A stretch of DNA of 63,019 bases. Origin: Dimorphilus gyrociliatus (taxonomy: Eukaryota > Animalia > Annelida). The stretch spans positions 1 to 63,019 of the forward strand of contig CAJFCJ010000063.1 in NCBI GenBank assembly GCA_904063045.1. Direction: 5' to 3'. The notes below the pieces were generated by a model. The model had not been told where the DNA came from. It saw only the letters and a list, made by a program, of their open reading frames with translations, and searched no databases. Below, in pieces: positions 7,601-63,019 of this stretch. Within the stretch, counting starts at the first letter, position 1. Every line of letters starts with the position of its first letter. Made by a program: the position numbers and the translations under genes.

Positions 7601-10600
7601 CCCATTCGGATAATGAGTCAATAATTATTGAAGGTGAAATTATTGACATAACCCATTCAGATAATGAGTCCCTCATAGTGGTAGATTCATCCCAAGATGA
7701 GAAAGAAAATACAAGTGACACAGACAATGAGTCAGTCATATTTTTAGATGAGACTAAAATCATCTCTGAACAATTAGATTCCCAACAAGAAGTGGAACCA
7801 CAATATATAGAGTTAGAAGATGGAATAACTATCAGAGTGGAACAACAACACAAAATTTTCAACCATTCAACTATAGCCAACACAGGAAGAGCTAACATGA
7901 AACAGATGTTGTGGCTTCCACTAGTGATGACTGTAATGGTGATCTGTGGCTGCATCCACTCAATAACAGTCCCAAAACCATCCTACCAAGGTGCCCATGT
8001 TACAAGTGCAAACATTACCTTAACATTTAAACCACCGTTATACTTTTGTTCTAACCAACTACCAAGCCAGGCATTTGATCTAGCAGATGAGCCAACTTGT
8101 AATATAGAATCACAAGAAACCAAGACAATTACAGCTGATATCTATGAATTGAACTTGGAAGAAATTGAAACAAGAGCAGTAAAATGTCAAGTGTATCTAA
8201 GAACTAATTTTTACACTTACTATTTCTTTGGAGCAAAGAAGAGGAGGATTGTTAACTCAGTTATCAAAGTAACTCATGATCAATGCAGACAGATGATAAA
8301 AGACAAACGATCTTTTCAAGGAAAACCTTTAATGGTGAAAAGAAACACTTGGATCCACCAAGATCAGTTTCCTGCTGCCTACACATGGCCAACAACGACC
8401 AAGGTGCTGGAATACACCACAATTATCCAGTTTGGCAAAGCATATTGGCAACCTCCTAATATGAAAATTACAACTAATCTGGACTACCTGGAAGATTGTT
8501 TACCAGGGCAGTCCTATTGTGAAACAGAAGAGGCAATTATTGTCTTTAGGAACCTCAAGAATAATTACACACTTGGGCAACAATCACCATGGATAAAAAT
8601 TAGCAACAGAATTAGTTGTATCAAATTTGCTGGTCACTATTCTTGTCCAGGGTATTCTATTCTGGACATCCCTTATCAAGATAAGTTTATTGATGGAATT
8701 GGTGGTCCTGGAACAAAAGTACTAGTACCACTGGAGGAACAGAGTTTAATACAGGAAACAAGCAAGGAACACCTATACAATTTGCTACAATATCAGAAGA
8801 TTGGCAAAAATGAAGAAAAACGACTATTAAACTATCCCAATAAAGTTAAAGAACAAATTATACTATACAAGCGAAACAACCCCTTACCAAGTCTTAACCA
8901 ATGGTACAGAGAAACAAACACAAAGTATAAACTAATGAGAAATAAAGGCACACTCAAGGAAGTTGTGATATATCATCTACAACAACCCATTAGTCCATCT
9001 TACTGGGAGCTGGATAACTATTATATCCAAGAAATGCTGCAAGCAGTCAATTGGACAAGGGCAACAAGACAATCTGTCACGATTTCAAAATATGTATACA
9101 GTGAGAAAAGAATCAAAAAGAAGGTATTACCAACATTGGGCATATGGTATAAAGGACCACCAGCCAGAGAATTCAAGATTACCTATGAAGGAATTTATTT
9201 TACTCTACACATGAGAATGGCTAAAAAGCAGATGAAGAAGGAAGCAAAACTGAAACATAAGATAAGTAAAAACCCATACCACAAATTCCCATTGGAAATG
9301 AGAGAAGCTGCCCAAACATCTACCTTACTACATGGTATTGATTCAAATTTTAAGAATTTAAAAAAGTTTACCCAACAGCTGTCAAGTCTTCTCTGCAATC
9401 AATTTGTTCAAAGAAGCAGAATGATGGCATTACTAGCAAATTTGGATCCTCAATTGACCACAGTGTTAACAAATGAGTTGGGAATGCACAGTAGTCAGAT
9501 GGGAGAATTAGCTATAATTAAACAATGTTCACCAATAGCCTCAACAGAAGTAGTTTGTGACTTAAGCATGATAAAAAAGAATAACAAATGTTCTCAATTT
9601 TTACTTGTCACCATGAACAACCTGCTTTTCCAAGTAGAACCAGTTACTCATGTTTTACAGCAAGTCAATCCTGAAGAGATTACCTATAATGAGTGTAAGT
9701 CTAACAAGTTATTCTACAAAACAACTCACAACCCATTAAATCCTATAAGAAACCAACCAATGAAAGACAAAACGTATGTGTATTATTCAGAAAGAGGATG
9801 CAGATTTCACACTGTGTCTGCAAAATCCATGCAGTTACATATCCACAATCACCTTTCTGAACCAAAAATTGAAATTGCCAGATTAGCTGATCTACTCCAC
9901 CATGGGGTAAAGAAGGATATTGCATACCAGCACTCAAAAATTAAGCAAGTTATCAGTTCACTGGAACAGAAGCAGGCAAGGTATGATAACATGGTCACTG
10001 TTGCAGAGAAAAATGGCATTGTACCCAATTTATCTGGAATTAAAAAGTTTTTCCATAGTTGGTACTATAAACCTGGGAAAACACTTTATGTTATCATACG
10101 AAATATTTGTTTGAGTATTGTAGTGTCAATGGTATGTATCATCATTTTCAACTATATTATTGGAAGAAGAAAACAAAGAGAAGAAATTGCTACCCCAAGT
10201 GAGAGCACAGATAACTCTCCTGAAAACCCAAAACTAATGAAACAAAGTTGTAGCTTTAGTCAACATCAAACTAATGAAGAAGAACAACCACCTGTAATTC
10301 TCATTAAATCAAGATGAAGGGACTCATCTTCACAAAGAAGGGGGAAGTTGTACAACTTTGGTTATATTTTACATGCTTGAACTCTATTATTTTATGCAAC
10401 ATATACATGTACATCTTAAAACCTACGCAAGAAAATGCTATAACATTGGCCAAACATAAGTCTGATTAGTCAGCTTGAAGGTTCATCTTTAATTACCAAT
10501 AAAGGTTTGGCCAAGTTATAATTTAATTAACTTGCCTAGGGTGTGGCCAAGTTATAATTCAATTAACCTTCCTAAATGTTGAACCTTGTAACATCCTGTT

Positions 10601-13600
10601 ACTAAAGATAAATATGAACTACACATTTCGGCAACTGTAAAGTGATGATTGGATGTCAGAGACAAACCTCAAAGTATATAAATCCTCATTATTCTCATTT
10701 GGCATGCAGCTTCCATCTGGACCCAAGGACCTGGGAAAATCATCTGGAAACAACCTCCACTGGAACCTTCCATCTACTCCTCAACATTGGAAGACAGTTT
10801 GGTAATTTGGCAACCTGCTATTACAAACTATCTACTCTGCTATTGAACTCTCATATTGTTACTTGCTTAAGTATTATTATTGCGAATAAACCATTTTAAT
10901 TTAAACATTTGTTTAAAGGTTCGAGTAGAACCAGTATTGTTATAACTTGCAAACGCATAGATTTTGCCAGCAAGAGCAGTACAGTAGGAGTGAATAATTT
11001 GAAAATTTATGTAAAATATCCTTTAATACATTAGTTAATCCTTCTGAATCTTCATGATAAATATATCTGTAGCTGTTCACCCATTTCCAGAAATTGGTAA
11101 TATAATCTTCGTATTTTTTATGATATTCTAAAATCTGTGTTGATTTTTTAAGCTCTTCCAAAATATTAAACTCTATATGTTCAGCCAACAACTCTACAGT
11201 ATCTTCTTCTACTATTCCTGTCTCTATAAGTTTAGAAACCAACCCAGTATTAAGGATATTCTTGTTTACAACGTTCCGTTTCATATTTTGAAACAGGAGA
11301 GGGTATTCTGTTGCTATTATCAAATCATCAGAATCAAAAACATTTAATACATTCTCTTCATTTAAAAACAGAGGCAATCCCTGTGGATCATTTTCCATCT
11401 CAAAGTCAAACTTTTCAGGAATAAATTCAATAAATTTTAGGAACCGTTCTAAATTCCTAAATGGTGTCTTGTTGATATGACGAGGAACTTTGCCAATGCA
11501 ATGATATTTAGATAATAAAAATTTGACAGTTTCCATTGGATTTACATCATAAATATTCATATCACCTTTTTTAAATATTTGTTTTAACTGTGAAGGTACT
11601 TGTGTTACTTTCATACCAATATCTTTTAATATATCAACAATATCATTTGAATATAGGCTTTTAAAATATAAAAGATATTTATCATTATGTTCGTTGTAAG
11701 ACAACCATTCAATTGATGAATTTGAAGATTTAAAAGCAAATATTTTACTCTGTCTTAAATTATTCATTAGGCCTTTGCATAAACCATTTAATAAAGGATT
11801 TTTCTCTCTTAATAATGGGAAAAAGTTATAAAAATCATAGAAAGTCAACTCTCTCTTCACAACTAACATTTGTAGTTGTTCAATAATTCTAGCATAACAA
11901 TAGCCTATTAGTTCAGTGAAAATGTACAAATTCCATTTCTCTTCAATTGCAATATCTTCTGTGTTATCTGAATCAAAATTTTGTCGAATACCTCTTCGAT
12001 TTTCGTGATCTAAATAAAAACGTCCATTTATATGAATAGGCATATAACTTTCAATTGGTAAAGGTAGATGACAGAATATCTTTTTCTTTATTTCAATTCC
12101 TTTTTCCAATTTGATTGGAAGAGCAACACCAGCTTCAGGATTATACTTTTTATCATTAAAATCATTTGGTAAATTATCCTTTTCTCTAAATCCATATGAA
12201 CGATAAATTAACCATTTTTGATCTTCTTCTAAATCATTTATATTGAGATAATAACATAAAGAAATTGGGTTGTAATGATGCTTATTATACATTTCTTGAG
12301 TGAAACTAGTTTGCTGGTAATTCTCACTAAACATTTCCTTTGAAGTTGATATACAAGATAATATCTTGTATGAATTATGAGTTTTCTTTTTAAATTCAAT
12401 CTTTTGAATACTATTCAAGAAAAAGAAACATTCTTTTGCGGTTTTACAAAAGTGCTCTTTTAACATTTCTTCTGCTTTGTCAAAGAGCAATGGTTTATCA
12501 GATAGTTTTGACTTTGTAGCCATACTACTATCTCTTAGTGGAAACCTGAATAAGACTCCATTTTTTAGATCAAATCCTTTGGGTATTGTCTGTAAAACAT
12601 CTGAATATAATTTCATACTTTCTAAAGGTATCATTCGGCCTGGCTTAAAAAAATTTTCAGAGTTTGGAAAGTATGAACGATGAGGATCAAATACGCAAAA
12701 AACTAGACCTTTTTTCTCATGATTAGCAACAATTATAGGTACATCAGTTAAATGATATACACAATTAAAACCAACACCAAATTCTCCAACTTTAGTCACA
12801 TCTGCTTTTTTACTTCCTTCACCTAACTTTTGAATTCCTTTGAAATCTTCATTCTGAAATTTTCCATTGTTATAAACCAGTAATGCTGGACACTTTTGTA
12901 AAGGTTTCCAAGAATCTCCAAATATTTTCTCATCTCCATATTCATTATCATCAAGAATAAATTGAATTTCAGTAGCACCAGCATCATCAGCATTCTGAAT
13001 AATCTCCTTAATAATTGTTCCATCATTTGGATAGGCTCGAAGAAGAGTTTTAATACGACAGATTAAATCCTCTGATTGACCAAATTCTTCTCCAATTCCA
13101 ATAGATTTTGCTTGAATGTACTTATCCTGATTATTTTGAATTCCTAGCCTCATAGCTAGATCAATACTAATTTTCTCATGGCAAATATTTAGGTCACTTT
13201 TATCAATCCAATCAACATTGCAAAAACATAAATCTCTATGGCTCAACCAAACATTTTTTGTATTAGGAATGAACAGATGATTGTTATTATCCTTTAGATA
13301 GAGTTGTAACATTTCATGACAATCCATTAAGTGATAAAGGATTAAAACTGTCATATTAACTTCATTATCACAATTTGAGGTACTATTCTCATCAGTTTTC
13401 TCCTTGATTTTACTTAGAATTTGAATGAAATCATCAAATGTAGGTACTCTTTTTACATGGAGAATATCTAAGAAATCAGTAGTAAAGACGTCTTCCACAC
13501 ATCTAAACATAAATGGTTCAAGCCTAGTAGTAATATTGGCCTGGTAGCATATTGAATGATCTGTTTCAAATTTATAACTGTCCATACTGTGAACAAGAAG

Positions 13601-44030: not shown

Positions 44031-44981
44031 TTATCCAAATCTATTCTGTATTGTGTTTGTATTTCCAAAGTTTTTTTTGGCGGTAATCCTTTTAAAAAGA
44101 TTAGTGTAAAATTTCTTGATTTTTAATCTAATAGATGATTTCGTATAACCATGAAGAAGGGCATTTATTGTTGAATTTGAAACAATAATTACTGTAAATA
44201 CTTCTGTAATAATTTGAAATTCGTATCTGGAGAAGATTTTTCTCTCTTCCACTGCATTGTACTTAGTAATTGTTAATGTAGCTGGTAAAGCCCATAATAA
44301 ACAATTGATTATTAATAAGCATGCTAAAATTCGGATGCTACTCCCTTCAGATTTTATATTATTAGCGTTCGATACATCAGAAATTGCTTTTCTCTGTTTT
44401 CTTATCGCTCTTAATATAGGAATATACAATAAGAAACTGGTAAAAGCATTAGGTAAAACAGTAGAGAATGACCAAAAAAACATGTACGTAAAAGGAAAAA
44501 CATTGTGAGTTTCACATTGAAAAGTTATATTATGCTGCAAAATATATTCATATCTATTCCAGCCAATTGCAGTTGGAAGTAGACAAATGGTAAAATTGAT
44601 TAACCATATGCAAGAAAGCAATATAAAAGCTTTCTTAATTGTCCAAATTTTGTAAAATGATAAAGGTTTTACAACAGCCAAAAACTTTTCAAATGTAATT
44701 AGAGTTAATGTAAATGATGATACTGCAACTATCATAAAAATAATTTCATATGCTAAAAGACATTTATAATAGCTTAGGTCTTTACTATGAAATAGAATAA
44801 AAATGAATATACTTATTGAATATAAAATATCTGTAAAGGTTAGTGCTGTAACACCAAAATTATGTAATTTCCATAAATCTTTATTAATAATATGAATAAT
44901 GATTAAATTAAAATTTAAAATTAAACCTGCAAATTGGTTGCAGCTTGATATAACTGTTAAATAAATGTTGTCGAACACCAT
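44031..44981 (-). CDS. Rhodopsin-family GPCR, probably N-terminally truncated, abutting the element B 3' LTR
   Basis: Seven hydrophobic segments; LTFTD (TM2), ITFEKFLAVVKPL (DRY position), IGWN, Cys in ECL2, NSTINALLHG (NPxxY position). Confidence 0.85.
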   Translation of the reverse strand: MVFDNIYLTVISSCNQFAGLILNFNLIIIHIINKDLWKLHNFGVTALTFTDILYSISIFIFILFHSKDLSYYKCLLAYEIIFMIVAVSSFTLTLITFEKFLAVVKPLSFYKIWTIKKAFILLSCIWLINFTICLLPTAIGWNRYEYILQHNITFQCETHNVFPFTYMFFWSFSTVLPNAFTSFLLYIPILRAIRKQRKAISDVSNANNIKSEGSSIRILACLLIINCLLWALPATLTITKYNAVEERKIFSRYEFQIITEVFTVIIVSNSTINALLHGYTKSSIRLKIKKFYTNLFKRITAKKNFGNTNTIQNRFG

Positions 44982-45916
44982 TGTACTTTGTTGTATTGTA
45001 ATTGTAGGAATTTCTGGTTCGTCACAACTGTAATCGTCCTTTCCAATCATTTACCAACTTGCCAAAGTACTGGTCCAAATAGAACCTTTAAAGTTCGTCC
45101 ACAAATAGTCTAACAAAGGCAATTTCGGTAGAAATTGATTAACAAAACACCAGTATTTCGTCCAAAGAATATGTATTGAGTAAAATGAGCTTCTAGTTCT
45201 AAACAAGCTAGTTTAAACAACTAGCTGACGGTTAGAAAACTGAACTATCAACTGTTAATTTCGTAGGGTTTATATACTCTTTTAAGGGTTGATAGTTCAC
45301 AAATTTCAATGTTCACAAAAACAAAAGTAACATTTGAAGACAAAGAAAAGTTCTAAATATGGTCATGTTTTTATTGTTTTCCTCTTCTAAATAATAGTTG
45401 AATTTCGAAGGTTGGAGAGTTGCATAAGATGTAACAATTTTAGTAGGACAAGTCCAACAATCAAGAAAACATGTAGATTGTATATTTGACCATTTTTATA
45501 TTCTACCTTAATAATGATATTCAATTGATTGAGTTAGTAAATTTAGCATCAGCATATAAGGAGGAAGTATATCTGATTAATGCATGTTAAAAAGAACAGT
45601 ATTGTGTATACAATACTGTTGAATAGTGAATATAATCTAACCTTAGAATTTAAGCATAATTGATAATTAATTGAACTAGTTTTAGTTCGAAATCATAAAT
45701 TTATGGATTAATAAATTGTAATATTAATGCTAGGTTGCAAATAGCAAATATTCTTTATATAATTCAATAGGTTTTATTACTGCATAATGTGTATGCACTG
45801 CCCTATGCGAAACTAGGTCACTACTGCTTATCTTTATCAGTGCTATCTGCATAGTACAATACTGGTTCAATACTACTTCTCTATTGTAGAATATAGCTGA
45901 CGAATGTATGTGTACA
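44982..45916 (-). repeat. Element B 3' LTR (935 bp)
   Basis: Matches 55472-56406 with two substitutions found by eye; TATATAAA on the minus strand near 45270-45277. Confidence 0.97.
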
Positions 45917-45920
45917 AACA

Positions 45921-45932
45921 TCCCACTCCTTT
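45921..45932 (-). promoter_or_regulatory. Element B polypurine tract
   Basis: AAAGGAGTGGGA on the minus strand, overlapping the env stop, 4 nt before the 3' LTR. Confidence 0.75.
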
Positions 45933-48360
45933 AAGACCTTGCTTCCACGAAAGGTCTAGGACTTGTGACAATTATGTTATCACCACTTTTTCTGAACATA
46001 GGATAATTTTGCAGTTCTATTTCTTCTGATTCAGCTGTTGGAGCTGAAGGTAATCTTTTTGTTTTTGTCAGTAGTTTAGACAGTCTGGTAAATTGAACTC
46101 TTTTCAGTTTTTTCTTCCAAATAAAGTAGATGAAGAATCCAATTCCAATCAAGAGTATAATTGGCAGAAGTGTGTCTATTAGTATTTTGAAAGGTTTTCT
46201 TATCCATGAAGAAAATAGATGTTGTGTTGGTGACAAGGCTGCATCAATTCCTAAATCATTTGCAAAGTTAATATGCTCTCTATGCTTAGTCAAAGTATCC
46301 TGTATGTATTCCAAAACTTGTTGTATCTGATAATGTTTCTTGCCCACATCTTCTTTTATACCTAGTTGTAATAATTCTGTGAGTCTGACAACTTCTAGTT
46401 TTGGTTCTTCAATTTGACTGTTGATTTTCATTCTGATTGATTGTGCTGCTGCTGTTTGGAACCTGCATCCTTTCCTTGTATAATAGATAAATGTCTTCTT
46501 GCCAGAATGTATGGCATATTGATTTTGTTCTGCATCCAAAGGATTTTTCTTGATCTTGAAGAGATGCTGAGTTTGGTCACATGTACCATATCTTATGTCT
46601 TCTTTTGTGATGTGGTAAGCATGATGAAGTATTGGATCAATTGAGAATAGGAGATCTTTATATTTGATCAGAAATTCTTTTGAACATAATCCATTTTTTG
46701 TTATAATTGTTGTGTCACAAACTACTTGAACAGTTTTTAATTCTGTACATGTATTGAGGGTTGTTAGATCTCCTAACCATGTACTATGGGTTCCATGTTT
46801 AGATCCAAGTATTGTTTGTAGTTGAGGTGATAGTGGTGTAAGTAGGGCTATCATCTTGTTTCTCATGATAAATTCTTTGCATAAAAGTTGTGAAACTTGT
46901 TTAAAAACTGTTTGTAAATTTTGAAAATTTTTGTCAATATTGTTTAGTAGTGCAGCTGTTCTTATAGCATCTTTTATATTTATTTGGTGGGATTCTGGAA
47001 TCTCTATGTTTTCTAATTGTTTCCTCTTCCATTTGTGATTTATTGGTTTTCTTTGTAAAAGTGTATATTTGCCATTTTCTGTATGAATTTGAAATTGTGT
47101 ATCTTTTGGGCTTTGATACCAAATGTTCATGTTTGGGAGTGGGTTGAAAGTAACTGGTTTTTTGTCCAATTCAAAATCTTGTGATCTTACTGGTCTGGCA
47201 GGTTTTAGCTTTGTTGTTTTCAGCATTTTTAGTATGTATTTGTTGTGAATATCCCAGATGTCTGGAGAAATAATTTCTTTGACAAACCAAGTCCTCACTA
47301 ATGGTGTTGCATGATTTTTTATCAGCATATGGTAGGTTTTGTCACCATCTCTATACCAATCATTATATGTTAAAATATCTTGTATTTCTGTGACATTGGC
47401 CTTTCTTAGTGATGATTTCTTTCCAATATATTTCTCCAATCTATTAACTTCTTTATTTGAAATGATCTTGTATTTTGTATCCTCTATTATTTTATTGTCA
47501 GCATAATTAGAATTTGTAAGATCAGTTCTAAGTAAGTCATATTCTTTCTGGGGTACCAATACTCTGGTACCAGGACCACCATATCCTTTGATATATCTGT
47601 CTTGGTAAGGTAAATCCATTATTGCATAGTTGGGGCAGGAAAAATATCCTCCAAGTTTTACACATTCCACATTATGGGAAACTATTTTCCATGGTGAAAC
47701 ATGGCCTAGAAGACTTTGGCCTTTTTCTGGATTAAATATAATGATTGAATCCAAAGTTCTACAAAATTTTTGTTTAATAGAACAGTCTTCTAAATATTCC
47801 AAATTTGTGGTTATTTTATCTTGACTTGGATTCCAATAAGCCTTGCCAATTTGAAGGATTGTTGTAAATTCTTCCACCACTGTGGTTCTTGGCCATTTGT
47901 AATTTGGTCCTTTGTTTTCATTATACATAAGAAGTTTGCCTTTTTCAATTAGGTTTTGTCCATTTAAGGTTTTGTGTGTGTATAGCATTGTTCTGCATTG
48001 TTTTTCACTTAAGGCAAGTGTTTGTTTTTCAATTCTGTGTTTCTTTGCTCCAAAAAAGTAATGAGTGTAGAAATTGATTCTTCTTTTCACTAAACACTTG
48101 ACAGCTTGAATTGCCAAATTGTCAGCTTTAATTTCATAGATGTTAGCTACAATTTTGATCATTTGTTTAGTTTCAAAGGTACATACTGGTTCATCTGCTA
48201 AATCAAATGATTGGTGTACTTGTTGTCCTTGACAAAACTGTACTGATGGTAGCATTCTTACAGTTATGTTTGCTTTTGTTATGGATACATTTGCTTGGAC
48301 CAAGTTTAAACAGCATATTGCTAACAGTGTATAAATTATTGATCCTCTGATAGGAAGCAT
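45931..48360 (-). CDS. env: Element B envelope glycoprotein
   Basis: Signal-like MLPIRGSIIYTLLAICCLNLVQA; shares ANIT..FC..Q.FDLADEP.C, YFFGAKK, TNLEYLEDC, PYQD..I.G.GGPGT.VLVP with element A env; TM LLPIILLIGIGFFIYFIW. Confidence 0.9.
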   Translation of the reverse strand: MLPIRGSIIYTLLAICCLNLVQANVSITKANITVRMLPSVQFCQGQQVHQSFDLADEPVCTFETKQMIKIVANIYEIKADNLAIQAVKCLVKRRINFYTHYFFGAKKHRIEKQTLALSEKQCRTMLYTHKTLNGQNLIEKGKLLMYNENKGPNYKWPRTTVVEEFTTILQIGKAYWNPSQDKITTNLEYLEDCSIKQKFCRTLDSIIIFNPEKGQSLLGHVSPWKIVSHNVECVKLGGYFSCPNYAIMDLPYQDRYIKGYGGPGTRVLVPQKEYDLLRTDLTNSNYADNKIIEDTKYKIISNKEVNRLEKYIGKKSSLRKANVTEIQDILTYNDWYRDGDKTYHMLIKNHATPLVRTWFVKEIISPDIWDIHNKYILKMLKTTKLKPARPVRSQDFELDKKPVTFNPLPNMNIWYQSPKDTQFQIHTENGKYTLLQRKPINHKWKRKQLENIEIPESHQINIKDAIRTAALLNNIDKNFQNLQTVFKQVSQLLCKEFIMRNKMIALLTPLSPQLQTILGSKHGTHSTWLGDLTTLNTCTELKTVQVVCDTTIITKNGLCSKEFLIKYKDLLFSIDPILHHAYHITKEDIRYGTCDQTQHLFKIKKNPLDAEQNQYAIHSGKKTFIYYTRKGCRFQTAAAQSIRMKINSQIEEPKLEVVRLTELLQLGIKEDVGKKHYQIQQVLEYIQDTLTKHREHINFANDLGIDAALSPTQHLFSSWIRKPFKILIDTLLPIILLIGIGFFIYFIWKKKLKRVQFTRLSKLLTKTKRLPSAPTAESEEIELQNYPMFRKSGDNIIVTSPRPFVEARS

Positions 48361-48383
48361 TCCACCATTTGTTTGGTGTTTCC

Positions 48384-50199
48384 GAATTATGGAGAAAACG
48401 TCCACTGGAGAAAACGTCCACTGATTGGAGAAAACGTCCACTGGTCGGAGAAAACGTCCACTGGAGAAAACGTCCACTATGTGAAGAATATATTAAAAAA
48501 TACTTTTTCAAATTTAAATTTTTATTATTGATTTTGAGATATATCCAATACATTCCCATAATGCAATCACTTTTGGTAGCCATTTTGAAATCCAGACAGG
48601 AAACAGTTCTGGGATCTTCTATGTTTTTCATGGAAAGTGAATATTGTGCATATTTCATCTACAATTTTTCAGAATTTTTTGCAGTTTGAAATATATTTCA
48701 CTATTGAAAACCATCAGACAAAACACAAACTTTAGAATTGATATCAGTAAGTTATAGAATATTGTGTTGAAATGATTTATTTATAAATTAGCTTTATTTT
48801 TATAGCAGCCATTTTGTTTATCATTATTGTTAATTGTTTAATTTTTAAATTTACACAGTTGGTTATTGATAGAGATTCCAAATTGAACATGGCACCAATT
48901 TGTTACATTTGTGAAGAGAGAATATATGGAAGACAAAATCAAGAGAAATGTCAGCTTTGCTGTCATTTATTTAAAATACATAAAAAATGTTTGGATTATA
49001 AAGGTTTGTTTAAGTTTTTTGTCACTATCCTTCCTTACAAATATGTTTTTATATTTTTTCACAGATCAATGGCTTTTGCTTTTATGGGATCTAAGAGAAA
49101 GACAGCCTACAAGAAATTATTTAAGGTACAATAATTTTGCATTTTAAATTGAATAATCTAATTTGTTAAATTAACAGGCAATACAAGATTTAACAAATGG
49201 GCATAGCCCCAAAAAAGTTGTTGTAGACTTTGAAAAAGCTATTTGGAAAGCACTATCATTCACTTATCCTGAAGCAAACATTAAAGGGTGTGTTTTTCAC
49301 TGGACACAGGCAATATACAGAAAGATTCAAGTAATACTTTAATTTAGTATTTGAGGTCTAGATTTGAACTGACATATTTATTTCCAGGAATTAGGATTAT
49401 GTAAGATGTACAAGGAGAAAAAAGCTGAATATAGAATCATGAAGAAATTAATGGCATTACCATTCCTGCCCTCTGATCTGATAGAACCAACATTTAAGAC
49501 TATTAAAGAAATAAGTCCTATTGAAATGAAGTCTCTATTGGAGTACATTGAGACACAATGGATAAATGGATTTTATAAACCAGAGGTATGGTCTGTTTAT
49601 GGTGAGGCTATAAGGACAAAAAATGATCTTGAAGGATGGCATCACAGGCTTAACAAGAATCTTTGCTCTAACACTGCATTCTATTTGCTTTTAGATGAAC
49701 TGAAAAGAGAAGCTGATCTGATAAAGCTATATAAAAAATTACTGAGTGAAAAGAAAATTTGTAGACAGCAAAGAAAAGCATATCAGAATATTCAGAGCAA
49801 AATATTCAGCTTATGGGAACAATTTGAAATTGCCTCAATTACCTCCCTGGACTTACTTGATAAACCTTCTGACATTTATTCACCAGTTTAAAATACCTTT
49901 ATTCTTTAATGTTGTTACACTGTTGTCAATCATTCTTGTTATAATGCTTGTTTTTACTTAATCAATATATTAATATTTAAATATTTGTAATTCTTATTAT
50001 TCATTTTTTCCTGTCAAATTGCTCTAAAAACTCCATCTATCAAATATCTTATATCTTACTTTGAAGTTTTATAGTGGACGTTTTCTCCAGTGGACGTTTT
50101 CTCCAAGCAGTGGACGTTTTCTCCAAACAGTGGACGTTTTCTCCAGTGGACGTTTTCTCCAGTGGACGTTTTCTCCAGTGGACGTTTTCTCCTGTACCC
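48384..50199 (+). mobile_element. Internally deleted MULE with tandem-repeat TIRs, inserted at the pol/env junction of element B
   Basis: Perfect 9-bp TSD GGTGTTTCC (48375-48383, 50200-50208); 5 left and 7 right copies of the 16-mer AGTGGACGTTTTCTCC in inverted orientation; PHD-like exon (CYICEE..CQLC..HKKC) and MULE C-terminus (VVDFEKA, GCVFHW, ALPFLP, DLEGWHHRLN). Confidence 0.93.
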
Positions 50200-53100
50200 G
50201 GTGTTTCCTTACTGTCACTGTGTTAACTGTTATAGGTTGTTTGTTAGCTAGTCTTAGTCTACTAGCATGATAGAATTTTCTTTTATCTGCCAATATTTGT
50301 AATTCATACAAACATTTTGTAGTATCTGTAGCAGTTACAAGATATGGTCCACTCCATTTGCTTGTATTTATTCTGTTCATTCCTTGACCAATGTTTTCAT
50401 TTCTTATGTGTACCCAATCACCAATTTTGTAAGTTGGAGGTTTTCTTGTAATAGCTTTATTAACTCTATCTCTATATTCCTTCTTTTTTAGAACAGATTT
50501 GCAAAGTGCTGTTGCTCTAATTTCTTCAAGTTCATGTTTTCTATCAAATAAGAATTTTGTTGTTGGTTCTAATCTTGGAACTTCCATTAACAGGTCTAAA
50601 ACATTTCTATTCTTCAATCCAAATAATATTTCATGTGGGGTTTTGCCAGTGCTTCCAACTGGAATTTGATTTAAACATGTCTGAATTAATGGTAACTGTC
50701 TTGTCCAATCTGTTAATTGTTCCATAACTACATGTTTATGTAGTGCTCTACGAATTTCCAAATTCTTTCTTTCTACCATTCCATTACTTTGGCTATGGAA
50801 TGCTGTTGTTTTAATTTTTCGTATTCCCATTGATGTCACCATTTCTGTAAAGATTTCCCCAAGAAAATTCCTTCCTTGATCTGTGAGAATTTCTTCTGGG
50901 ATACCAAATATTGGGAAATAGTTGAAAAACAAATGTTTAGAAATTTCCTCAGCTGTTTGAGTTTTTAGAGGGAATATGTTGGTAAATCTGGACATGTGGT
51001 CTATAATGACAAGTATATACTTGTAAGAATCATGTCCAGTCAGAGGTCCCATTATGTCCATAGCTATTCTTTGCATTGGTAAAGTTGGGTGAGGTGTTTC
51101 AACCAACAGATGTTTGTTGCCTGGTGCTCTTAATTGCTCACAAAATTCACAACTCTTTATGTGATCTTTAATTGTTTTCTTTAGCTTTGGGTGCCAGAAA
51201 GCTTGCTCCAAAGTGTGAATTGTTATGTCTACACCATAGTGCTCAAATAGTTGATGTTGATGAATTTGTCCAAGTAAGTTGGTTAGAGTTGATAGTGGAA
51301 TTACAAGTAGTGGTTGACAGCCATTTAGATACCATACAAGGTCTTCTTTTACAAACATAGATTCAATAAAGTTTCCATATTCATTCAAAGACCCATTATC
51401 AATGTTTTCTCCTTCCAATTTGTCTACAACTTTCATTAGTGGAGTATCTAATACTTGTTCTCTATAGAAGTTTATTTCAACTGGTGTGATTTTTAGTTTC
51501 ATAATCTGGGCTTGGATTTCAGTTATGTCTTCATCATAATCATTGTCTAGATTGTCATCTAAACAATCATCTAATTCTTCTAAGTCCTCTGTATCAATAT
51601 AAAAGCATTTAAGCATATCCTTTCTTTCTGCTAATTGGGGAACTGTATTGCCATTTTGTTTTTCTTCATTTAATCTTTCCTTAAGTAAATTACGAAAATC
51701 AATTACTTCATCAGTTTCACCAATTCTTGATATCCAGTCTGCTCTATTAGTTCTTCCTGGTATGTATATTATTTCAAAATCCATATCCATAAGTGCCATC
51801 ACCCATTTAACAGTACTTGTATTCAGTTTGTTTTGTACAAATGTTTGTACCAAATTTTGGTGATCAGTGTAGAGAAAAAATTTCTTATACTGTAGATAAT
51901 GGGAGAATTTTTGTACTGCCCAATATACTGCAAAAGCCTCTTTTTGATAAGCTGCATATCTTAGTTGTGTATTGATTAGGAGCTTGGAAGCAAAAGAAAT
52001 TGGTTTTCTTATTTTCTTTCCATCTTCTTCCCATTCTTGTTCTAGAACTGCACCAACTGCATAATTAGAAGCATCTGTTGTTAAATAGAATGATTTAGTA
52101 AAGTCTGGCAGTTGAAGGATTGGGGGCTCTGTCATTGCATTCCTTAGTGTTTCATAAGCTTCCTCTGCTTTTTTTGTCCATTTCAGTTTTTCTGTCTTTT
52201 GGTGTACTTTTAATAATTCTCTCAAAGGTTTTGTGATTTTTGCAAAATCTTTAACAAATCTTCTATAATAACCACAAAATGCCACAAAACTCAACAGAGT
52301 ATTTGCAAACATAGGTAATTTGGCATCTTTTATTTTTTGAATCTTTTCAGGATCAGTTTCAATACCATTCTGTGTAATTCTATGACCAAGGAATTGAACT
52401 GATTCTTGTAAGAATGCACATTTGCTCAGTTTAATTCTGAAGTCTTTTTCCTTGATTCTTTCCATAAGTTTCTGTAGAGCTACAAAGTGTTCTTCCAATG
52501 TTTTGGTAAAAACTATAATATCATCCATATAATTAATGCAGAAGTTTTCCAATCCATTAATAACAAAATTTGCCATGATATAGCTGAAGTGTGAAGGTGC
52601 ATTTGCCAAACCAAATGGCATGCGGTTGAATTCAAATAAACCAAATGGTGTAATAAAAGCAGTTTTCTCCTTATCTTCTTCTTTAATTGGAATATGATGA
52701 AATGCACTTGTTAAATCCAATATAGAAAAATATTTGTGGCCTCCTCCAAGCTTATCAAATAAATCTTCCTGATGTGGGATTGGATAACAATTCTTTTTTG
52801 ATTGCTTGTTAAGTTTTCTGTAATCCACACACATTCTTAATGTTCCTTCTTTCTTTTTCACAAAAACAATGGGTGAAGCCCATTGGCTTTTGCTTGCTCT
52901 AATTAGACCATTTTCCAATAATCCATTTAATTGATCCCTGCATTCCTGCTGTTTGTTGGGTGGCAATCTGTATGGTCTTTGTTTGAAAGGCTTTATATCT
53001 TCCAATAATTCAATTGCCATTGGTGGAACATCTGGTGAACCAATGTCATTCTGATTTGTAGCAATAATATCTTCATAATTCTTTATCATTTCTTTTAATT

Positions 53101-54337
53101 CTTCTCTGTTCTTGTCAAGATTATTTTTGGACACATGTAAATAATTGTCAATTTCTAGTGTATTTGAATTAATATTGTGTACATTTTGATTAGACAAATG
53201 TTCAAATTCAATACTTTCCAACTGTAATTCTTCTATTTCAGGAGTAACTGGATTTTTCTTTTGTTCTTTTTGCACTTTGATAGTTATTCCATCTTCTAAT
53301 TCTATGTATTGTGGTTTCATTTCCATTTCCATAGCCAAGTCTTCAGTTTCTTCTTCAGAGGAATTTATGAGAATAACTGAGTCATTGTCAGACTTAGGTA
53401 TATTTCCAGTCTCTTCATCAGATGAGTCTATAACCATTATGGAATCATTGTCAGACTCAATTGTGTTACTGGTCTCTTCTTCAGATGAGTCTATAACAAT
53501 CATTGAATCATTATCAGGCTCAGTTATGTTATCAAGCTCTTCCTCAGATGAGTCTATAACAATCATTGAACCATGATCAGAATCAGTTGAATCACTAATT
53601 TCATCTTCAGATGAGCTTGTACCATTGATTATATCCAAATCTGAGTCTGGGCTGTGATCTGATTCAATACTTGTTTCTGTATCATAATTTTCAGAAGTAC
53701 TGGAACTTTCATCTGTGCCATAATTGCTATTTGAATCAAAACCATTGAATCCCTCATAAACTATGCTTGAACCATGAGTGTTGCTTGTATCATAGCCAGT
53801 ATCTGGATCAGTAACTTCCATTTCTGAGTCCACACTATCTGAAACTTCAGATGGAGTATCAAAAACTTCAGATGGAGTGTCAGAATCTTCAAAATACTGT
53901 CCCATCATTCCAACAGTTACTTTTTTTACACTGCCTTGTTTTCCAAATTTTGTTTGGTGATTTTCGTTATATTGCAAAAACTTTCTAACTGGTTGTCCTT
54001 TTCTGATAAAGAATGGAAGAGAAACTTGTTTTGTTGCAAAATCAATAAGAGCTCCAGCATTTTCTAAGAAATCACAACCAAGTATTATAGCCATATCTAG
54101 TTTTTCCATAATAAAGAATTCTTGTTCCATAATTCTTCCATTAAATTGAATATTCAGTTTTGTTTTTCCTTTTGTCTTTAAAGCATTTCCCTCTGCTGAA
54201 GTGATGATTGGTAAGCCAGTAGTTTCTTTCTTGATGAATTTAGAATCCATTAACCTGATTTCTTTTTCTGTAATAAATGACAAAAGTGCTCCTGAATCAC
54301 ATAAAGCAATAACCTCTCTTCCATTATGATTTTTCAT
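50200..54337 (-). CDS. pol: Element B Pol (PR, acidic spacer, RT, RNase H, integrase)
   Basis: LCDSGAL..AIILGCDFL; D/E/S-rich tract; YMDD; LTTDASN; DIMGP, TDQG, GMVERKN; KWSGPY. The last codons of the listed ORF are MULE TIR sequence. Confidence 0.93.
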
Positions 54338-55468
54338 TCAAAATTGGAAATCTTTTCTGCCTTTTACCAAAGAAGTACACTTAAAATGTGCGATTTTCTC
54401 TTCTTTGAGATTAAATATTGCCATTCTTCCTTTAGAAATTTCAGTTTCATTAGGTTCATCAGGTCCAACATGTATTAGTCTGTTAAAGCTGCCTTTTTCA
54501 TTATTTCCTGCATTTCCATTTCTTTGTTGTTGAAATCTATTTTGAGAAAAAGGTTTAAATGTATGTTCATTTTGATTTGAGTTACTCTGATTGTTGTCAA
54601 ATCTCCTTTTGTACTGTTTGAATTCATTTTCGCTTTCTTTTCTTGCATTATCAAAAAATATTTCTGCTCTTTTTGCCAATTTAATATACTGATTAACTGA
54701 GTTAATCTTTCCATCTTTTTCCACATGATTAACAATTTTTCCTTTAAGACCATTCCTGAATACAGTTAACAGTTGAAGTTCTCTAACTCTTTCAGTAACA
54801 CAAGCCATTTCAGTAGTATTGAATGGTAGGAATTTTTCCACAAGTTCTTTACTTCTTCTAACAAAACTTTGGACAGTTTCATCATTGAACTGTCTCAATC
54901 TATCAATTTCTTTTTTGTAAGCCATAGGATCTGGATTAAATTCTTCATCCAATGCATCCCAAATTTCATTTTCATTTGCCATGGAGGGTAAACTTTCAAT
55001 AACATCTCTGGCTCTTCCAGTAGTGTATTTTCTCAGCATTCGAACTCTTTTCTCTTCTGTATCCCAAAGGTTTAATTCACAAGCTGTTTGAAAGTTCCTC
55101 TTAAAGGCCCAAGTATCTTTGCTACCAGAATAGGGTCTCAGCAAAGTAGTATTAGGTTTCTCATTAGCATCAATTAGAAGACTTGCAATTGTCTTTTCCA
55201 AAGCATTATCTTGAATGCCATCATAACTGAATTTTGGTTGAGTAGGATCAGGATTAACCATACCTTCAGGAATTGTAGCTGCCCCAGTCATCAAATGGTA
55301 CTTTAAAAAGCTATTACCATCAACTTTGGCTCCACTACTTTTAATTCTCAACATTAATTCATTAATTTTTGAAAGATACTCATCTACTTCCTTGGCTCTG
55401 GCTTTGTCATTCTCATAAACCAAAATAACATTCATTGAAGTAGCATTGTGGGCTGTCGACTGCGCCAT
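54338..55468 (-). CDS. gag: Element B Gag (no CCHC knuckle), separated from pol only by an in-frame TGA
   Basis: PYSGSKDTWAFKRNF..W..LRKYTTGRARDVI..L+EEF.P..L.Q..DETVQSFV, a Gag capsid-like pattern also seen in element A. Confidence 0.88.
   Translation of the reverse strand: MAQSTAHNATSMNVILVYENDKARAKEVDEYLSKINELMLRIKSSGAKVDGNSFLKYHLMTGAATIPEGMVNPDPTQPKFSYDGIQDNALEKTIASLLIDANEKPNTTLLRPYSGSKDTWAFKRNFQTACELNLWDTEEKRVRMLRKYTTGRARDVIESLPSMANENEIWDALDEEFNPDPMAYKKEIDRLRQFNDETVQSFVRRSKELVEKFLPFNTTEMACVTERVRELQLLTVFRNGLKGKIVNHVEKDGKINSVNQYIKLAKRAEIFFDNARKESENEFKQYKRRFDNNQSNSNQNEHTFKPFSQNRFQQQRNGNAGNNEKGSFNRLIHVGPDEPNETEISKGRMAIFNLKEEKIAHFKCTSLVKGRKDFQF
55453..55467 (-). promoter_or_regulatory. Element B primer-binding site (tRNA-Ser type)
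   Basis: TGGCGCAGTCGACAG, identical over 15 nt to the element A PBS, starting 5 nt inside the 5' LTR. Confidence 0.85.
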
Positions 55469-55471
55469 ATT

Positions 55472-56406
55472 TGTACTTTGTTGTATTGTAATTGTAGGAA
55501 TTTCTGGTTCGTCACAACTGTAATCGTCCTTTCCAATCATTTACCAACTTGCCAAAGTACTGGTCCAAATAGAACCTTTAAAGTTTGTCCACAAATAGTC
55601 TAACAAAGGCAATTTCGGTAGAAATTGATTAACAAAACACCAGTATTTCGTCCAAAGAATATGTATTGAGTAAAATGAGCTTCTAGTTCTAAACAAGCTA
55701 GTTTAAACAACTAGCTGACGGTTAGAAAACTGAACTATCAACTGTTAATTTCGTAGGGTTTATATACTCTTTTAAGGGTTGATAGTTCACAAATTTCAAT
55801 GTTCACAAAAACAAAAGTAACATTTGAAGACAAAGAAAAGTTCTAAATATGGTCATGTTTTTATTGTTTTCCTCTTCTAAATAATAGTTGAATTTCGAAG
55901 GTTGGAGAGTTGCATAAGATGTAACAATTTTAGTAGGACAAGTCCAACAATCAAGAAAACATGTAGATTGTATATTTGACCGTTTTTATATTCTACCTTA
56001 ATAATGATATTCAATTGATTGAGTTAGTAAATTTAGCATCAGCATATAAGGAGGAAGTATATCTGATTAATGCATGTTAAAAAGAACAGTATTGTGTATA
56101 CAATACTGTTGAATAGTGAATATAATCTAACCTTAGAATTTAAGCATAATTGATAATTAATTGAACTAGTTTTAGTTCGAAATCATAAATTTATGGATTA
56201 ATAAATTGTAATATTAATGCTAGGTTGCAAATAGCAAATATTCTTTATATAATTCAATAGGTTTTATTACTGCATAATGTGTATGCACTGCCCTATGCGA
56301 AACTAGGTCACTACTGCTTATCTTTATCAGTGCTATCTGCATAGTACAATACTGGTTCAATACTACTTCTCTATTGTAGAATATAGCTGACGAATGTATG
56401 TGTACA
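55472..56406 (-). repeat. Element B 5' LTR (935 bp)
   Basis: Direct repeat of 44982-45916, followed by the PBS on the minus strand. Confidence 0.97.
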
Positions 56407-61341: not shown

Positions 61342-63019
61342 TCATTCTTTATGTCTCTTTTCATTAGACAACTCTTTCTCTGTTCTATCATTATCTTCTT
61401 GTGGAAGAATACACTGGTTTTTAACTGCCTTATTTAAATTTTTACTTTCACTTTCAATACTATCATTTTCGAAATTTATGACATTCCTATCTGATAGAAC
61501 TTTTACATCATCATTCAGGTTAGAATCGAATGGAATACTTTCGGAATCCTGCTTAGAAGCTAGCAAATATTTGCAACCAGGCACATTCATATCAATTTTC
61601 GAAATTAATTGATTAAATTCATCGCCTTCCCATAGTTTATTATCTTTCCTCCTGTGAAAACCTATGTATAACAGTTGTGCAAATACCATTGACATTGGTC
61701 CCTCTGGAGGCCATTTCATATCATCTAATAATAATGGTATAATTGGTTTATTTAATGCTCCCGATAATGAAACTTCTCTTCGACAATTAGCACTTAAAGC
61801 ATGTTTTGGTGTGACACAGGAAATAACAACTCTACAACCTCTGATTCCTTTATCAATTTTATCAAATAGTGAATCTCCACCACCCATTTGCATTATGTCC
61901 AGCCAACAATGATATCCCAATCCACTCAACTTCTTGTATAGGCATCTGATTTGAGGTTGTTTATCCCATTGATAAGAGATGAAAACATTGGGACTTCTCA
62001 CTTCTTCGTCCTCACTTTTAGCATTCAATGTTTTGGATTCTACAGCCTTTTGCTCTCTCTTTGGTATTATTATTTCTTCTTCAGGTGGATTCATCCATCC
62101 TGCATATGGAGAATCTTTAGCTGTCAATTTCATATCAGGAACAACATAGTATCGAATTTGCATCAGTAGTTCTTGAAATTTAGGAGGCATCCAAAACACT
62201 TTATCACCTTTTTGCATGCCTCCATTTTTGAAGAATTGAATGTATAGATATTCAGACATAATTGGACCCATCAGACCAGCAGGCGGCCATTGTAGTTTTT
62301 CCATAAGTAAAGGAATCATTGGTTTACCAAGATTAGTTGTTAAATTTACTTCTCTGCAACAATTTGCTGATTTTGAGTATTTCTCACTTACACAGCTAAT
62401 GATTACTTTAGCTGATCTTACGCCATCATTAATTTTTGAATATAGTTTATCACCTCCACCCATTTGACCAATGTCCATCCAGCCTTTAAAGCCGGCCATC
62501 TCTAGGTGTTTCTTTAACATTTTAACTTCTTGTTGATGTCCCTATTGATAGCTGAGAAATATTTCAGGTTTTTTGAATTCTTCTTCTTCATCTTTAACAA
62601 CATTTTTTACAGAAGCTAAAGCGTTTTCTACAATTTCTGCTGCATTGAGTCTGTTCATTTCTTTTAAATTATTTAAAATGGCAAAAGTAGCTTCTCTTGT
62701 TTTGTGTGTAGCGAACCATTCGTCCAACATCGATAGACAAGGATCTGGTTGAGTAGCCCAATGTCGAATATCATCATTAGAATAGTTCAATTTCATAGAG
62801 AGAAGTCTCCAATCATTATCAGATTGATCATTCATTAATTCTGAAACATGACGAGACCATGCTGGAGCGTGTGATAGAGTCATATGATTTAATAGTTCAA
62901 CTCTTTCGTCAAGTCCTTTGATTGTATATTCAATTTGATCAATGCGTTTCTTTGTTTCCTTTACATCTTGTTTTACATCAGCAACATCTTTCTTTGTTTC
63001 TTTATCATCGGTATCGAGG
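61342..63019 (-). CDS. Coiled-coil, Death domain, tandem TIR (TIR_2-like) protein C-terminus with an in-frame TAG; extends past the right edge
   Basis: DWRLLSMKLNY..MLDEW (Death); two FxSYQ(W)..WxDIxQMGGGDxL..IxxGxR..SxNCxREV..KPxIPLL..WPP repeats; TAG at 62542-62544 aligns with Trp of the second TIR. Confidence 0.85.

What the first reader, a model, noticed from the sequence alone, without database searches (positions are those of the whole stretch)
53280..53900. Independent expansion of a four-copy phospho-SIM-like array between PR and RT in element B
Seen: four units with a 21-aa (63-bp) period, MIVIDSSEEE, MIVIDSSEEE, IMVIDSSDEE and VILINSSEEE (about 53350-53575). They lie in a tract homologous to element A's spacer (EMEVT..DTGYDTSNT and PQYIELEDGITI are shared). 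The repeat unit differs from A's 17-aa unit, yet both amplify a hydrophobic core plus SS-acidic tail. Inference: separate amplifications converging on the same motif point to selection for multivalent SUMO binding rather than neutral slippage. A ~250-aa acidic insert between PR and RT is itself unusual for Ty3/Gypsy Pol.
Basis: partly seen in the sequence, partly recalled or inferred. Interest (0 to 1): 0.8.

Follow-up and report, generated by a model that had tools for sequence, protein, structure and literature searches.

The report
SUMO-motif-like repeat in annelid retrotransposon Pol
A young 'Dingle' retrovirus-like element of the tiny annelid Dimorphilus gyrociliatus carries, between its protease and reverse transcriptase, a conserved acidic spacer with four tandem 21-residue units that look like phospho-regulated SUMO-binding motifs; the repeat is real and its cores look selected, but SUMO binding is untested and the array is inherited, not convergent.

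Summary
On the minus strand, Pol (50069-54337) of an LTR element (44981-56406) has a 63-bp x4.2 in-frame tandem repeat. It encodes MIVIDSSEEE, MIVIDSSEEE, IMVIDSSDEE and VILINSSEEE, plus a degenerate fifth unit. The repeat lies in a 193-aa acidic, Ser/Thr-rich tract between PR and RT.

The host is Dimorphilus gyrociliatus and the elements are the published 'Dingle' Ty3/gypsy family with env.

- In element A the homologous tract is not between PR and RT. It belongs to a second, B-like 'gag-tail + PR2 + spacer' module lying after integrase and just before env.
- A also has two 21-aa units. Its last units match B's last units, so the array predates the split. Only the newest duplications (A1/A2; B1-B3) are lineage-specific.
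- Core positions change less than linkers, both between A and B and among B's own units. Synonymous change is similar. The data are few, so this favours selection only weakly.
- A metagenomic relative has a short acidic PR-RT spacer with one such motif and no array. No other relative of the spacer was found among 1.84 billion proteins.

SUMO binding rests on motif resemblance only.

The parts
53318..53569 (-). Four 21-aa (63-bp) units B1-B4. Each reads S-psi4-[DN]SS-[DE]EE, then a 7-aa variable linker, then DND.
   Evidence: TRF; translation; unit coordinates; unit identities
53570..53632 (-). Degenerate unit 0 (IINGTSSSEDEISDSTDSDHG). It aligns to A's NIISDREDE and to the only such motif (FVFKISTEEN) in relative C.
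53318..53896 (-). Acidic Ser/Thr-rich spacer of B Pol (residues 148-340). It includes the conserved EMEVT..DTGYDTSNT box.
   Evidence: dN/dS 0.22 for the part before the array
53842..53891 (-). B-specific 21-bp x2.4 mini-repeat (DTPSEVF/DTPSEVS) with no SIM-like core. It shows the tract is slippage-prone in general.
   Evidence: TRF; gap in A in alignment
53273..53317 (-). Conserved C-terminal box KPQYIELEDGITIKV that closes the spacer. Homology with A ends about 8 residues later.
   Evidence: 87% identity, dN/dS 0.22
53996..54325 (-). Protease of element B (DSG active site).
   Evidence: Pfam RVP_2/RVP
50069..54337 (-). Pol ORF of element B: PR, spacer, RT, RNase H, IN.
54338..55540 (-). Gag ORF of element B. 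It ends in an in-frame TGA directly before Pol.
44981..56406 (-). Whole element B. LTRs at 44981-45916 and 55471-56406 are 99.8% identical. The env-like ORF is at 45931-48477.
6886..7326 (+). Element A: gag-tail-like piece plus a second protease (PR2, DTG motif). It lies downstream of IN, is 67% identical to B's PR, and has a frame break at about 6953-6958 in this copy.
   Evidence: the L004 copy is unbroken at that point
7327..7794 (+). Element A acidic spacer. Units are A0 7513-7566, A1 7567-7617 and A2 7618-7668 (17 aa each), A3 7669-7731 and A4 7732-7794 (21 aa each).
7795..7839 (+). Element A copy of the C box (EPQYIELEDGITIRV). The env signal peptide follows about 25 residues later.
1670..10983 (+). 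Whole element A. LTRs at 1670-2299 and 10349-10983 are 99.1% identical, with a 4-bp target-site duplication (GTAG).

Best explanation
Shown:
- The array is an in-frame tandem duplication inside a conserved, acidic, probably disordered spacer domain.
- That spacer travels with the protease of the B clade of Dingle retroelements of Dimorphilus gyrociliatus.
- The array predates the split between element B and the B-like 'gag-tail + PR + spacer' module that element A carries between IN and env. Each lineage then duplicated one more unit.
- Within units, a 14-residue block (DN[DE]-S-psi4-[DN]SS-[DE][DE]E) changes more slowly than the 7-residue linker.

Inferred:
- Each block is a short linear motif of the phospho-regulated SUMO-interacting type: a beta-strand-forming hydrophobic core followed by CK2-type serines and acidic residues.
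- Four or five blocks spaced 21 residues apart would bind poly- or multi-SUMOylated partners with avidity, like an RNF4-type tandem-SIM module without a ligase domain.
- Carried on Gag-Pol or on a PR-spacer cleavage product, such a module could tether particles or pre-integration complexes to SUMO-rich chromatin. It could also soak up SUMO-dependent silencing factors.
For: - The repeat and its reading frame are real.
- Homology and unit-by-unit correspondence with A.
- A related metagenomic element C has PR, a 70-aa acidic spacer with one motif, then RT. This fits expansion from a single motif.
- Purifying selection on the spacer between lineages: dN/dS 0.22 before the array, 0.39 in cores, 0.78 in linkers, against 0.34 for PR.
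- Paralogous units B1-B3: core nonsynonymous changes 0-3 per 34 sites vs linker 5.5-7 per 16, with similar synonymous change.
- The truncated third B-like copy (L001) keeps the unit-4 core with a conservative I-to-V change and has a 4-aa insertion in the linker.
- Both extra full copies keep the unit number.
- The published SIM consensus is [V/I/L]-[V/I/L]-x-[V/I/L] in disordered regions, flanked by acidic residues or phospho-serines and bound as a beta strand (PMC9371903). Tandem SIMs are transferable and gain affinity (PMC3631770, PMC4083429).
- None of the 150 closest protease relatives has such an array.
Against: - There is no binding or phosphorylation evidence. The SIM consensus is short and degenerate.
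- B1 and B2 fit it only if Met is accepted at the first core position.
- A1 and A2 have lost the DSS serines, and A4 has lost the acidic tail (KII in place of EEE).
- Element C lacks the array, so the array is not essential to this kind of element.
- The selection tests rest on two lineages and three paralogous units, are not independent, and assume positional orthology within a repeat.
- One of the two A copies has an I-to-T change in a core.
- The single-sequence AlphaFold model is uninformative (pLDDT 37).
- The spacer also holds a SIM-free mini-repeat, so slippage happens there regardless.
Confidence: 0.4

Rival explanations
1. Neutral slippage in a tolerant linker. The PR-RT spacer is a dispensable acidic junction like the Ty3 J domain. 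Units were duplicated by template slippage during reverse transcription or replication. Their similarity reflects recency and composition, not a binding function.
For: - Ty3 has a junction domain between PR and RT (PMC11381356).
- Element C has a short spacer without an array.
- The spacer contains another repeat without a hydrophobic core at 53842-53891.
- A1/A2 lost four residues including the serines, and A4 is degenerate.
Against: - Spacer dN/dS is 0.22-0.39 between old lineages (dS about 0.9-1.2), similar to the protease.
- Units B1-B3 have diverged 16-22% in DNA, yet differences pile up in the linker and core changes are synonymous or conservative.
- The whole tract was retained when the module moved to a new position in element A.
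Confidence: 0.25
2. A selected motif array with a partner or role other than SUMO. Examples are a CK2-dependent acidic-cluster or other hydrophobic-acidic docking motif, a regulator or pseudo-substrate or set of processing sites for the adjacent protease, or a histone or nucleic-acid-mimicking acidic domain.
For: - The selection signals are the same as above.
- The spacer co-transfers with the protease as one module with sharp homology borders, from the gag tail to the C box.
- The most conserved parts of the spacer are the non-repeat boxes EMEVT..DTGYDTSNT and PQYIELEDGITI, which are not SIM-like.
Against: - No other curated motif fits as well.
- There is no aromatic residue for LIR or activation-domain types.
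- PxVxL and DSGxxS do not fit (read from the sequence; own knowledge of those motifs).
- There is no evidence of cleavage at the units.
Confidence: 0.3
3. The repeat acts at the nucleic-acid level, for example as internal polypurine tracts for plus-strand priming or as purine-rich splicing enhancers. The peptide would then be incidental.
For: Each unit holds a GAAGAAGAG-type purine run.
Against: - The element's polypurine tract next to the 3' LTR (AAAGGAGTGGGA) is unlike the unit.
- Conservation follows codon logic: synonymous changes are tolerated in cores and amino-acid class is kept.
- A's units differ in DNA but keep the peptide pattern.
Confidence: 0.03

Closest known systems
Phospho-regulated SIMs of PML, Daxx and PIAS1 (CK2-dependent 'phosphoSIM')
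   Same: A hydrophobic 4-residue core is followed directly by serines in S-x-x-[DE] context and an acidic run, in a disordered acidic region (consensus from PMC9371903; PMC4276917).
   Different: - Here the motifs are four or five tandem copies in a retroelement polyprotein.
- Two units start with Met.
- A's 17-aa units lack the serines.
- Neither phosphorylation nor binding has been tested.
Tandem-SIM poly-SUMO readers (RNF4, RNF111/Arkadia; engineered SUMO-traps)
   Same: Several SIMs sit close together in a disordered segment and give avidity for SUMO chains or multi-SUMOylated proteins (PMC4083429, PMC5445624, PMC3678163, PMC3631770).
   Different: There is no RING or other ligase domain (Pfam finds only PR, RT, RNase H and IN). 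The period is a regular 21 aa produced by recent duplication.
Ty3 junction (J) domain between PR and RT
   Same: It occupies the same position in Pol between protease and reverse transcriptase (PMC11381356). From my own knowledge it is acidic and dispensable for Ty3 transposition.
   Different: The Dingle spacer is about 3 times longer, is conserved between lineages, carries a motif array, and in element A sits after IN instead.
Dingle / 'ancient errantivirus' env-carrying Ty3/gypsy elements of annelids
   Same: The host is the same (P0001 is a D. gyrociliatus protein). The elements have LTRs, gag, pol and a downstream env, as described in PMC7854359 and PMC13524379.
   Different: Term searches of those two papers found no mention of the acidic spacer, the SIM-like array or a second protease.

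Membership tests
SUMO-interacting motif (SIM), phospho-regulated type | Hydrophobic core [V/I/L]-[V/I/L]-x-[V/I/L] (or psi-x-psi-psi) | tested here: met
   B3 IMVI, B4 VILI, A3 LIVV, A4 VIFL and A1/A2 IIDI fit strictly. B1/B2 MIVI fit only with Met at position 1 (consensus from PMC9371903).
SUMO-interacting motif (SIM), phospho-regulated type | Ser/Thr in CK2 context (S-x-x-D/E) and an acidic run directly after the core | tested here: inconclusive
   Met in B1-B4 and A3 (DSSEEE, DSSDEE, NSSEEE, DSSQDE). Not met in A1/A2 (serines deleted; ESE/EGE) or in A4 (DETKII).
SUMO-interacting motif (SIM), phospho-regulated type | Lies in an intrinsically disordered region | tested here: inconclusive
   Composition is 31% D+E, 30% S+T and 1% K+R. 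The AlphaFold2 single-sequence model has pLDDT below 50 throughout, including the protease, so the model says little.
SUMO-interacting motif (SIM), phospho-regulated type | Binds SUMO; binding is enhanced by CK2 phosphorylation | not testable with these tools
   No complex prediction or assay is available.
SUMO-targeted ubiquitin ligases (RNF4-type) | Tandem SIMs plus a RING/E3 domain | tested here: not met
   Tandem SIM-like motifs are present, but there is no RING. Pfam finds only RVP/RVP_2, RVT_1, RT_RNaseH, Integrase_H2C2 and rve.
Ty3-type PR-RT junction domain | Non-enzymatic segment between PR and RT of Pol | tested here: met
   B has PR at 5-107, RT at 493-654 and the spacer between. 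C has the same order. This is not met for A's copy, which lies after IN. Sequence homology to the Ty3 J domain was not tested.
Dingle (Ty3/gypsy with env) of Dimorphilus gyrociliatus | LTR pair, PBS, gag, PR-RT-RH-IN and a downstream env ORF, in the D. gyrociliatus genome | tested here: met
   LTRs; PBS and TSD; domains; env-like ORFs with signal peptide and TM; further copies on GCA_904063045.1 contigs. The gB-like fold of env is taken from PMC7854359 and was not tested here.
Chromovirus-type integration targeting | Chromodomain at the C-terminus of IN | tested here: not met
   There is no Chromo hit in either Pol at E<=0.01.

The most novel reading that the evidence does not exclude
Dingle elements encode a portable protease-linked poly-SUMO-binding module: a ligase-less tandem phospho-SIM array. 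It has been exchanged between retroelement lineages and kept in two different polyprotein contexts (PR-RT in B, IN-env in A). The element would use it to engage SUMOylated host chromatin or silencing machinery, either to direct integration into SUMO-rich closed chromatin or to blunt SUMO-dependent transposon repression.
Probability: 0.25. Interest if true: 0.75.

Novelty: new variant of a known kind. Interest (0 to 1): 0.5.

Why it matters
SUMO is central to heterochromatin formation and small-RNA-guided transposon silencing in animals (PMC10363806, 10.1101/533091). My literature searches found no retroelement polyprotein described with a tandem SIM array. If the array binds SUMO, it would be a transposon-encoded reader of the very modification hosts use to silence transposons. 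That would give a testable route to integration targeting or counter-silencing, in an animal with a very compact genome where TEs cluster in closed chromatin (PMC7854359). Separately, element A's second protease-plus-spacer module between IN and env shows modular exchange between env-carrying Ty3/gypsy lineages. If the array does not bind SUMO, the finding reduces to a conserved repeat in a junction domain of a known TE family.

Tried and rejected
- **Word-index protein searches.** PR plus spacer gave only one D. gyrociliatus chimeric gene model, because low-complexity words saturated the candidate list. PR alone gave nothing in the allowed length range.
- **Full HMM search with the A+B profile.** There were 221 hits. 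All matched the protease only, except two D. gyrociliatus gene models. No relative of the spacer turned up and there is no sign of capture from a host SIM protein.
- **DNA collection scans.** IMG/VR and JGI metagenome scans with the profile and a back-translated PQYIELEDGITI pattern found nothing.
- **PDB sequence search with the array.** Only chance matches (E 0.27 or worse).
- **AlphaFold2 single-sequence model of PR plus spacer.** pLDDT was 37 and even the protease was not folded. Weak strand calls at each core carry little weight. No fold search was run on it.
- **Internal polypurine tract idea.** Rejected, because the real PPT differs from the unit.
- **Other motifs.** HP1 PxVxL, beta-TrCP DSGxxS, LIR and acidic activation-domain readings were rejected by inspecting the sequence.
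- **Third-lineage PR fragment in L004 (9986-10324).** It is truncated right after the protease and joined to a TIR gene model, so it gives no spacer data.
- **Handling of broken frames.** Broken frames were read piece by piece, spliced gene models (P0001, P0002) were not re-joined, and no contig was taken for human.

Full report
**1. What is there**

The window is AT-rich (30.7% GC). It comes from the annelid Dimorphilus gyrociliatus. The only database protein that shares the spacer is DgyrCDS14407, and further copies lie on contigs of assembly GCA_904063045.1.

The finding sits in a minus-strand LTR element, 'B', at 44981-56406:
- Its 936-bp LTRs are 99.8% identical.
- It has gag (54338-55540) and a 1422-codon Pol (50069-54337). 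Pol contains PR (residues 5-107), RT (493-654), RNase H, the integrase zinc domain and the integrase core.
- An env-like ORF with a signal peptide and a C-terminal TM segment lies at 45931-48477.

This matches the published 'Dingle' Ty3/gypsy family with a herpesvirus-gB-like env (PMC7854359). It also matches the env-carrying 'ancient errantiviruses' of annelids (PMC13524379). Term searches of both papers found no mention of SUMO, an acidic spacer or a second protease.

**2. The observation**

Tandem Repeats Finder gives a 63-bp period, 4.2 copies, 76% matches and no indels at 53349-53615. In the Pol frame the units are:
- B1 SMIVIDSSEEELDNITEPDND
- B2 SMIVIDSSEEETSNTIESDND
- B3 SIMVIDSSDEETGNIPKSDND
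- B4 SVILINSSEEETEDLAMEMEM

A degenerate unit 0, IINGTSSSEDEISDSTDSDHG, precedes them. They lie in a 193-aa tract (residues 148-340) with 31% D+E, 30% S+T and 1% K+R. The conserved box KPQYIELEDGITIKV closes the tract.

The four motifs are copies of one duplicated unit, so their co-occurrence is not a chance question. A loose SIM pattern hits 22 times in 126,000 six-frame residues of the window, four of them in the array.

**3.

Element A (1670-10983) has LTRs 99.1% identical and a 4-bp target-site duplication, GTAG.
- Its own gag-PR1-RT-RNase H-IN lies in one ORF (2225-6976). There is no acidic tract between PR1 and RT.
- The tract homologous to B's spacer lies after integrase.
- The last ~75 residues of that ORF resemble the end of B's gag.
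- A second protease follows (PR2, with a DTG motif).
- Then come the acidic spacer with the repeat, the C box and, about 25 residues later, the env signal peptide.

Identity values show where PR2 came from:

| Comparison | Identity |
|---|---|
| PR2 (A) vs PR (B), protein | 67% |
| PR2 (A) vs PR (B), DNA | 76% |
| PR1 (A) vs PR (B), protein | 36% |
| PR1 (A) vs PR2 (A), protein | about 30% |
| RT-IN, A vs B, protein | 47% |
| RT region, A vs B, DNA | 68% |

So A carries a 'gag-tail + PR + spacer' module from a B-related lineage, placed between IN and env.

In the window copy the frame breaks inside the PR2 active-site region (about 6953-6958). In a second A copy (L004) the integrase frame runs straight into PR2 at that point, but PR2 is broken at two other places. 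I read each frame separately and did not join or mend anything.

Two A copies at different loci share this architecture, so it has transposed as a unit.

**4. Is the array convergent or inherited?**

MAFFT aligns the two arrays unit for unit, 4 + 1 in each.
- A has two 17-aa units (SIIIE[SG]EIIDITHSDNE) and two 21-aa units (SLIVVDSSQDEKENTSDTDNE and SVIFLDETKIISEQLDSQQEV).
- The 17-aa unit aligns as a 21-aa unit lacking four residues, among them the DSS.

DNA identities between units:

| Pair | Identity |
|---|---|
| A1-A2 | 92% |
| B1-B2 | 84% |
| B1-B3 | 78% |
| B2-B3 | 79% |
| A3 vs B2/B3 | 67% |
| A3 vs A1/A2 | 51-55% |
| A4 vs B4 (best match for A4) | 52% |

The 3' units are therefore orthologous and the array predates the split. 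The most recent duplications (A1/A2, and within B1-B3) are lineage-specific, or else were homogenised within each lineage.

A more distant relative, 'C', comes from two ENA metagenome assemblies (L002, L003). Its Pol is 57% identical to B. It has PR, a 70-aa acidic tract and then RT, with no array. Its single FVFKISTEEN motif aligns with unit 0.

The simplest history has three steps:
- an acidic PR-RT junction with one hydrophobic-acidic motif;
- expansion to an array in the common ancestor of B and of A's module;
- one further duplication in each lineage.

'Independent expansion' is thus true only for the last step, and 'convergence on the same motif' is not supported.

**5. Selection or slippage?**

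*Between A's module and B (Nei-Gojobori):*

| Segment | dN/dS | dN | dS |
|---|---|---|---|
| PR | 0.34 | 0.22 | 0.64 |
| Spacer before the array | 0.22 | 0.27 | 1.23 |
| Array cores (S-psi4-DSS-EEE plus DND) | 0.39 | 0.34 | 0.86 |
| 7-aa linkers | 0.78 | 0.68 | 0.88 |
| C box | 0.22 | 0.06 | 0.26 |

*Among the paralogous units B1-B3:*
- Cores carry 0-3 nonsynonymous differences per 34 sites; linkers carry 5.5-7 per 16.
- Synonymous differences are similar in the two classes.
- Fisher p values on raw differences are 0.0015, 0.052 and 0.023, but the three pairs are not independent.
- Core changes are M/I swaps and E to D.

*Other copies:*
- A truncated B-like copy (L001, about 90% identical) keeps unit 4 with an I-to-V change and has a 4-aa insertion in the linker.
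- The second B and A copies keep the same unit number. Their few differences are uninformative, apart from one I-to-T change in an A core.

The data are thin: two lineages, short segments, and assumed positional orthology within a repeat. The tract is also generally slippage-prone, since a B-specific 21-bp x2.4 repeat without a hydrophobic core lies at 53842-53891.

**6. What the motif resembles**

The published SIM definition has these features (PMC9371903):
- a core [V/I/L]-[V/I/L]-x-[V/I/L];
- location in a disordered region;
- flanking by acidic residues and/or phosphorylatable Ser/Thr;
- binding as a beta strand.

CK2-phosphorylated serines next to the core strengthen binding in PML, Daxx and PIAS1 (PMC9371903; PMC4276917).

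How the units compare:
- B3, B4, A3, A4 and the second core of A1/A2 fit strictly. B1/B2 (MIVI) fit if Met is allowed.
- B1-B4 and A3 have two serines in S-x-x-E context. A1, A2 and A4 do not.

Tandem SIMs give avidity for SUMO chains in RNF4 and Arkadia, and remain active when transplanted (PMC4083429, PMC5445624, PMC3678163, PMC3631770). There is no RING domain here, so this is at most a reader or trap, not a STUbL.

None of the 150 closest protease relatives from a 1.84-billion-protein library has such an array. They give 16 scattered single hits in 64,000 residues. The spacer itself has no detectable relatives outside D. gyrociliatus. Literature searches found no retroelement polyprotein described with a SIM array.

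**7. Mechanism**

*Shown:* a conserved, duplicated hydrophobic-acidic motif array lies in a protease-linked spacer and has been retained in two polyprotein contexts.

*Inferred, with about 0.4 confidence:* the array is a phospho-regulated multivalent SUMO-binding module on Gag-Pol or on a PR-spacer product. Plausible uses are tethering to SUMO-rich closed chromatin or interference with SUMO-dependent silencing. The first fits the report that Dingle copies cluster in closed chromatin (PMC7854359). The second fits the role of SUMO in transposon silencing (PMC10363806, 10.1101/533091).

*Rivals:*
- neutral slippage in a Ty3-J-like junction (0.25);
- a selected motif with another partner or a protease-related role (0.3);
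- a nucleic-acid-level role (0.03), which the element's real polypurine tract does not support.

**8. Limits**
- Only five spacer-bearing sequences could be reached: two B copies, one B fragment and two A copies. Relative C adds a sixth without the array.
- The host genome is not in the searchable DNA collections.
- The single-sequence AlphaFold model was uninformative.
- SUMO binding, CK2 phosphorylation, polyprotein processing and expression of A's module could not be tested.

Noticed in passing
window 6886-7920 (+); L004:700-1800: Element A has two proteases with intact catalytic motifs: PR1 with DSG in gag-pol, and PR2 with DTG after IN. In the L004 copy the integrase frame runs directly into PR2, so the ancestral arrangement may have been a single gag-to-env reading frame. 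The window copy breaks at about 6953-6958, and the L004 copy breaks at two other points in PR2.
   Followed up: partly
window 48390-50192: A stretch of about 1.6 kb between Pol and env of element B is flanked by inverted arrays of a 16-bp tandem repeat (AGTGGACGTTTTCTCC; 96.7% inverted match). The ends of the Pol and env ORFs run into these arrays. In the L004 B-like copy Pol and env are adjacent, so this looks like a foldback-type insertion.
   Followed up: partly
window 54338-54340 (-); L004:18892-18894: The window copy of B has an in-frame TGA between gag and Pol. The L004 copy, element C and A's module have a sense codon there, giving a fused gag-pol ORF.
   Followed up: partly
window 44976-44981 and 56407-56412: Element B has no matching target-site duplication, whereas element A has GTAG on both sides. 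B may stem from recombination between two copies.
   Followed up: no
window 44031-45050 (-): A rhodopsin-type GPCR ORF (Pfam 7tm_1, E 2e-18) has its first 23 codons inside the LTR of element B. The element therefore sits at or in the 5' end of this host gene.
   Followed up: no
window 10940-19387 (-) and 61342-62520 (-): Host-type genes flank the elements: three ORFs with sacsin domains (E down to 3e-66) and a TIR-domain protein (E 4e-36). The window is therefore not a gene-free TE island.
   Followed up: no
L001:10001-15256; L004:10001-11550: The annotated D. gyrociliatus proteins DgyrCDS14407 (P0001) and P0002 are chimeric gene models that join host exons to Dingle fragments. P0002 joins a PR fragment to a TIR_2 protein.
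   Followed up: partly
window 2300-2320 and 55450-55470: Elements A and B share nearly the same primer-binding site (TGGCGCAGTCGACAG) although their Pols are only 47% identical.
   Followed up: no
window 24682-24881, 32278-32607, 38348-38464: There are further degraded Dingle pieces: an LTR fragment 84% identical to B's LTR, an env/LTR-border fragment (71%) and another LTR piece (76%). A short TTAGGG x3.3 run lies at 24512-24531.
   Followed up: no
window 53460 (+ frame) and 7583 (- frame): The antisense frames of both arrays also read as hydrophobic plus Ser-acidic strings (IVLLVSSSDE, LSIIIDSSSE). This is a by-product of codon complementarity; the ORF listing (minimum 100 aa) lists no plus-strand ORF over B's array, and A's was not checked.
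   Followed up: no
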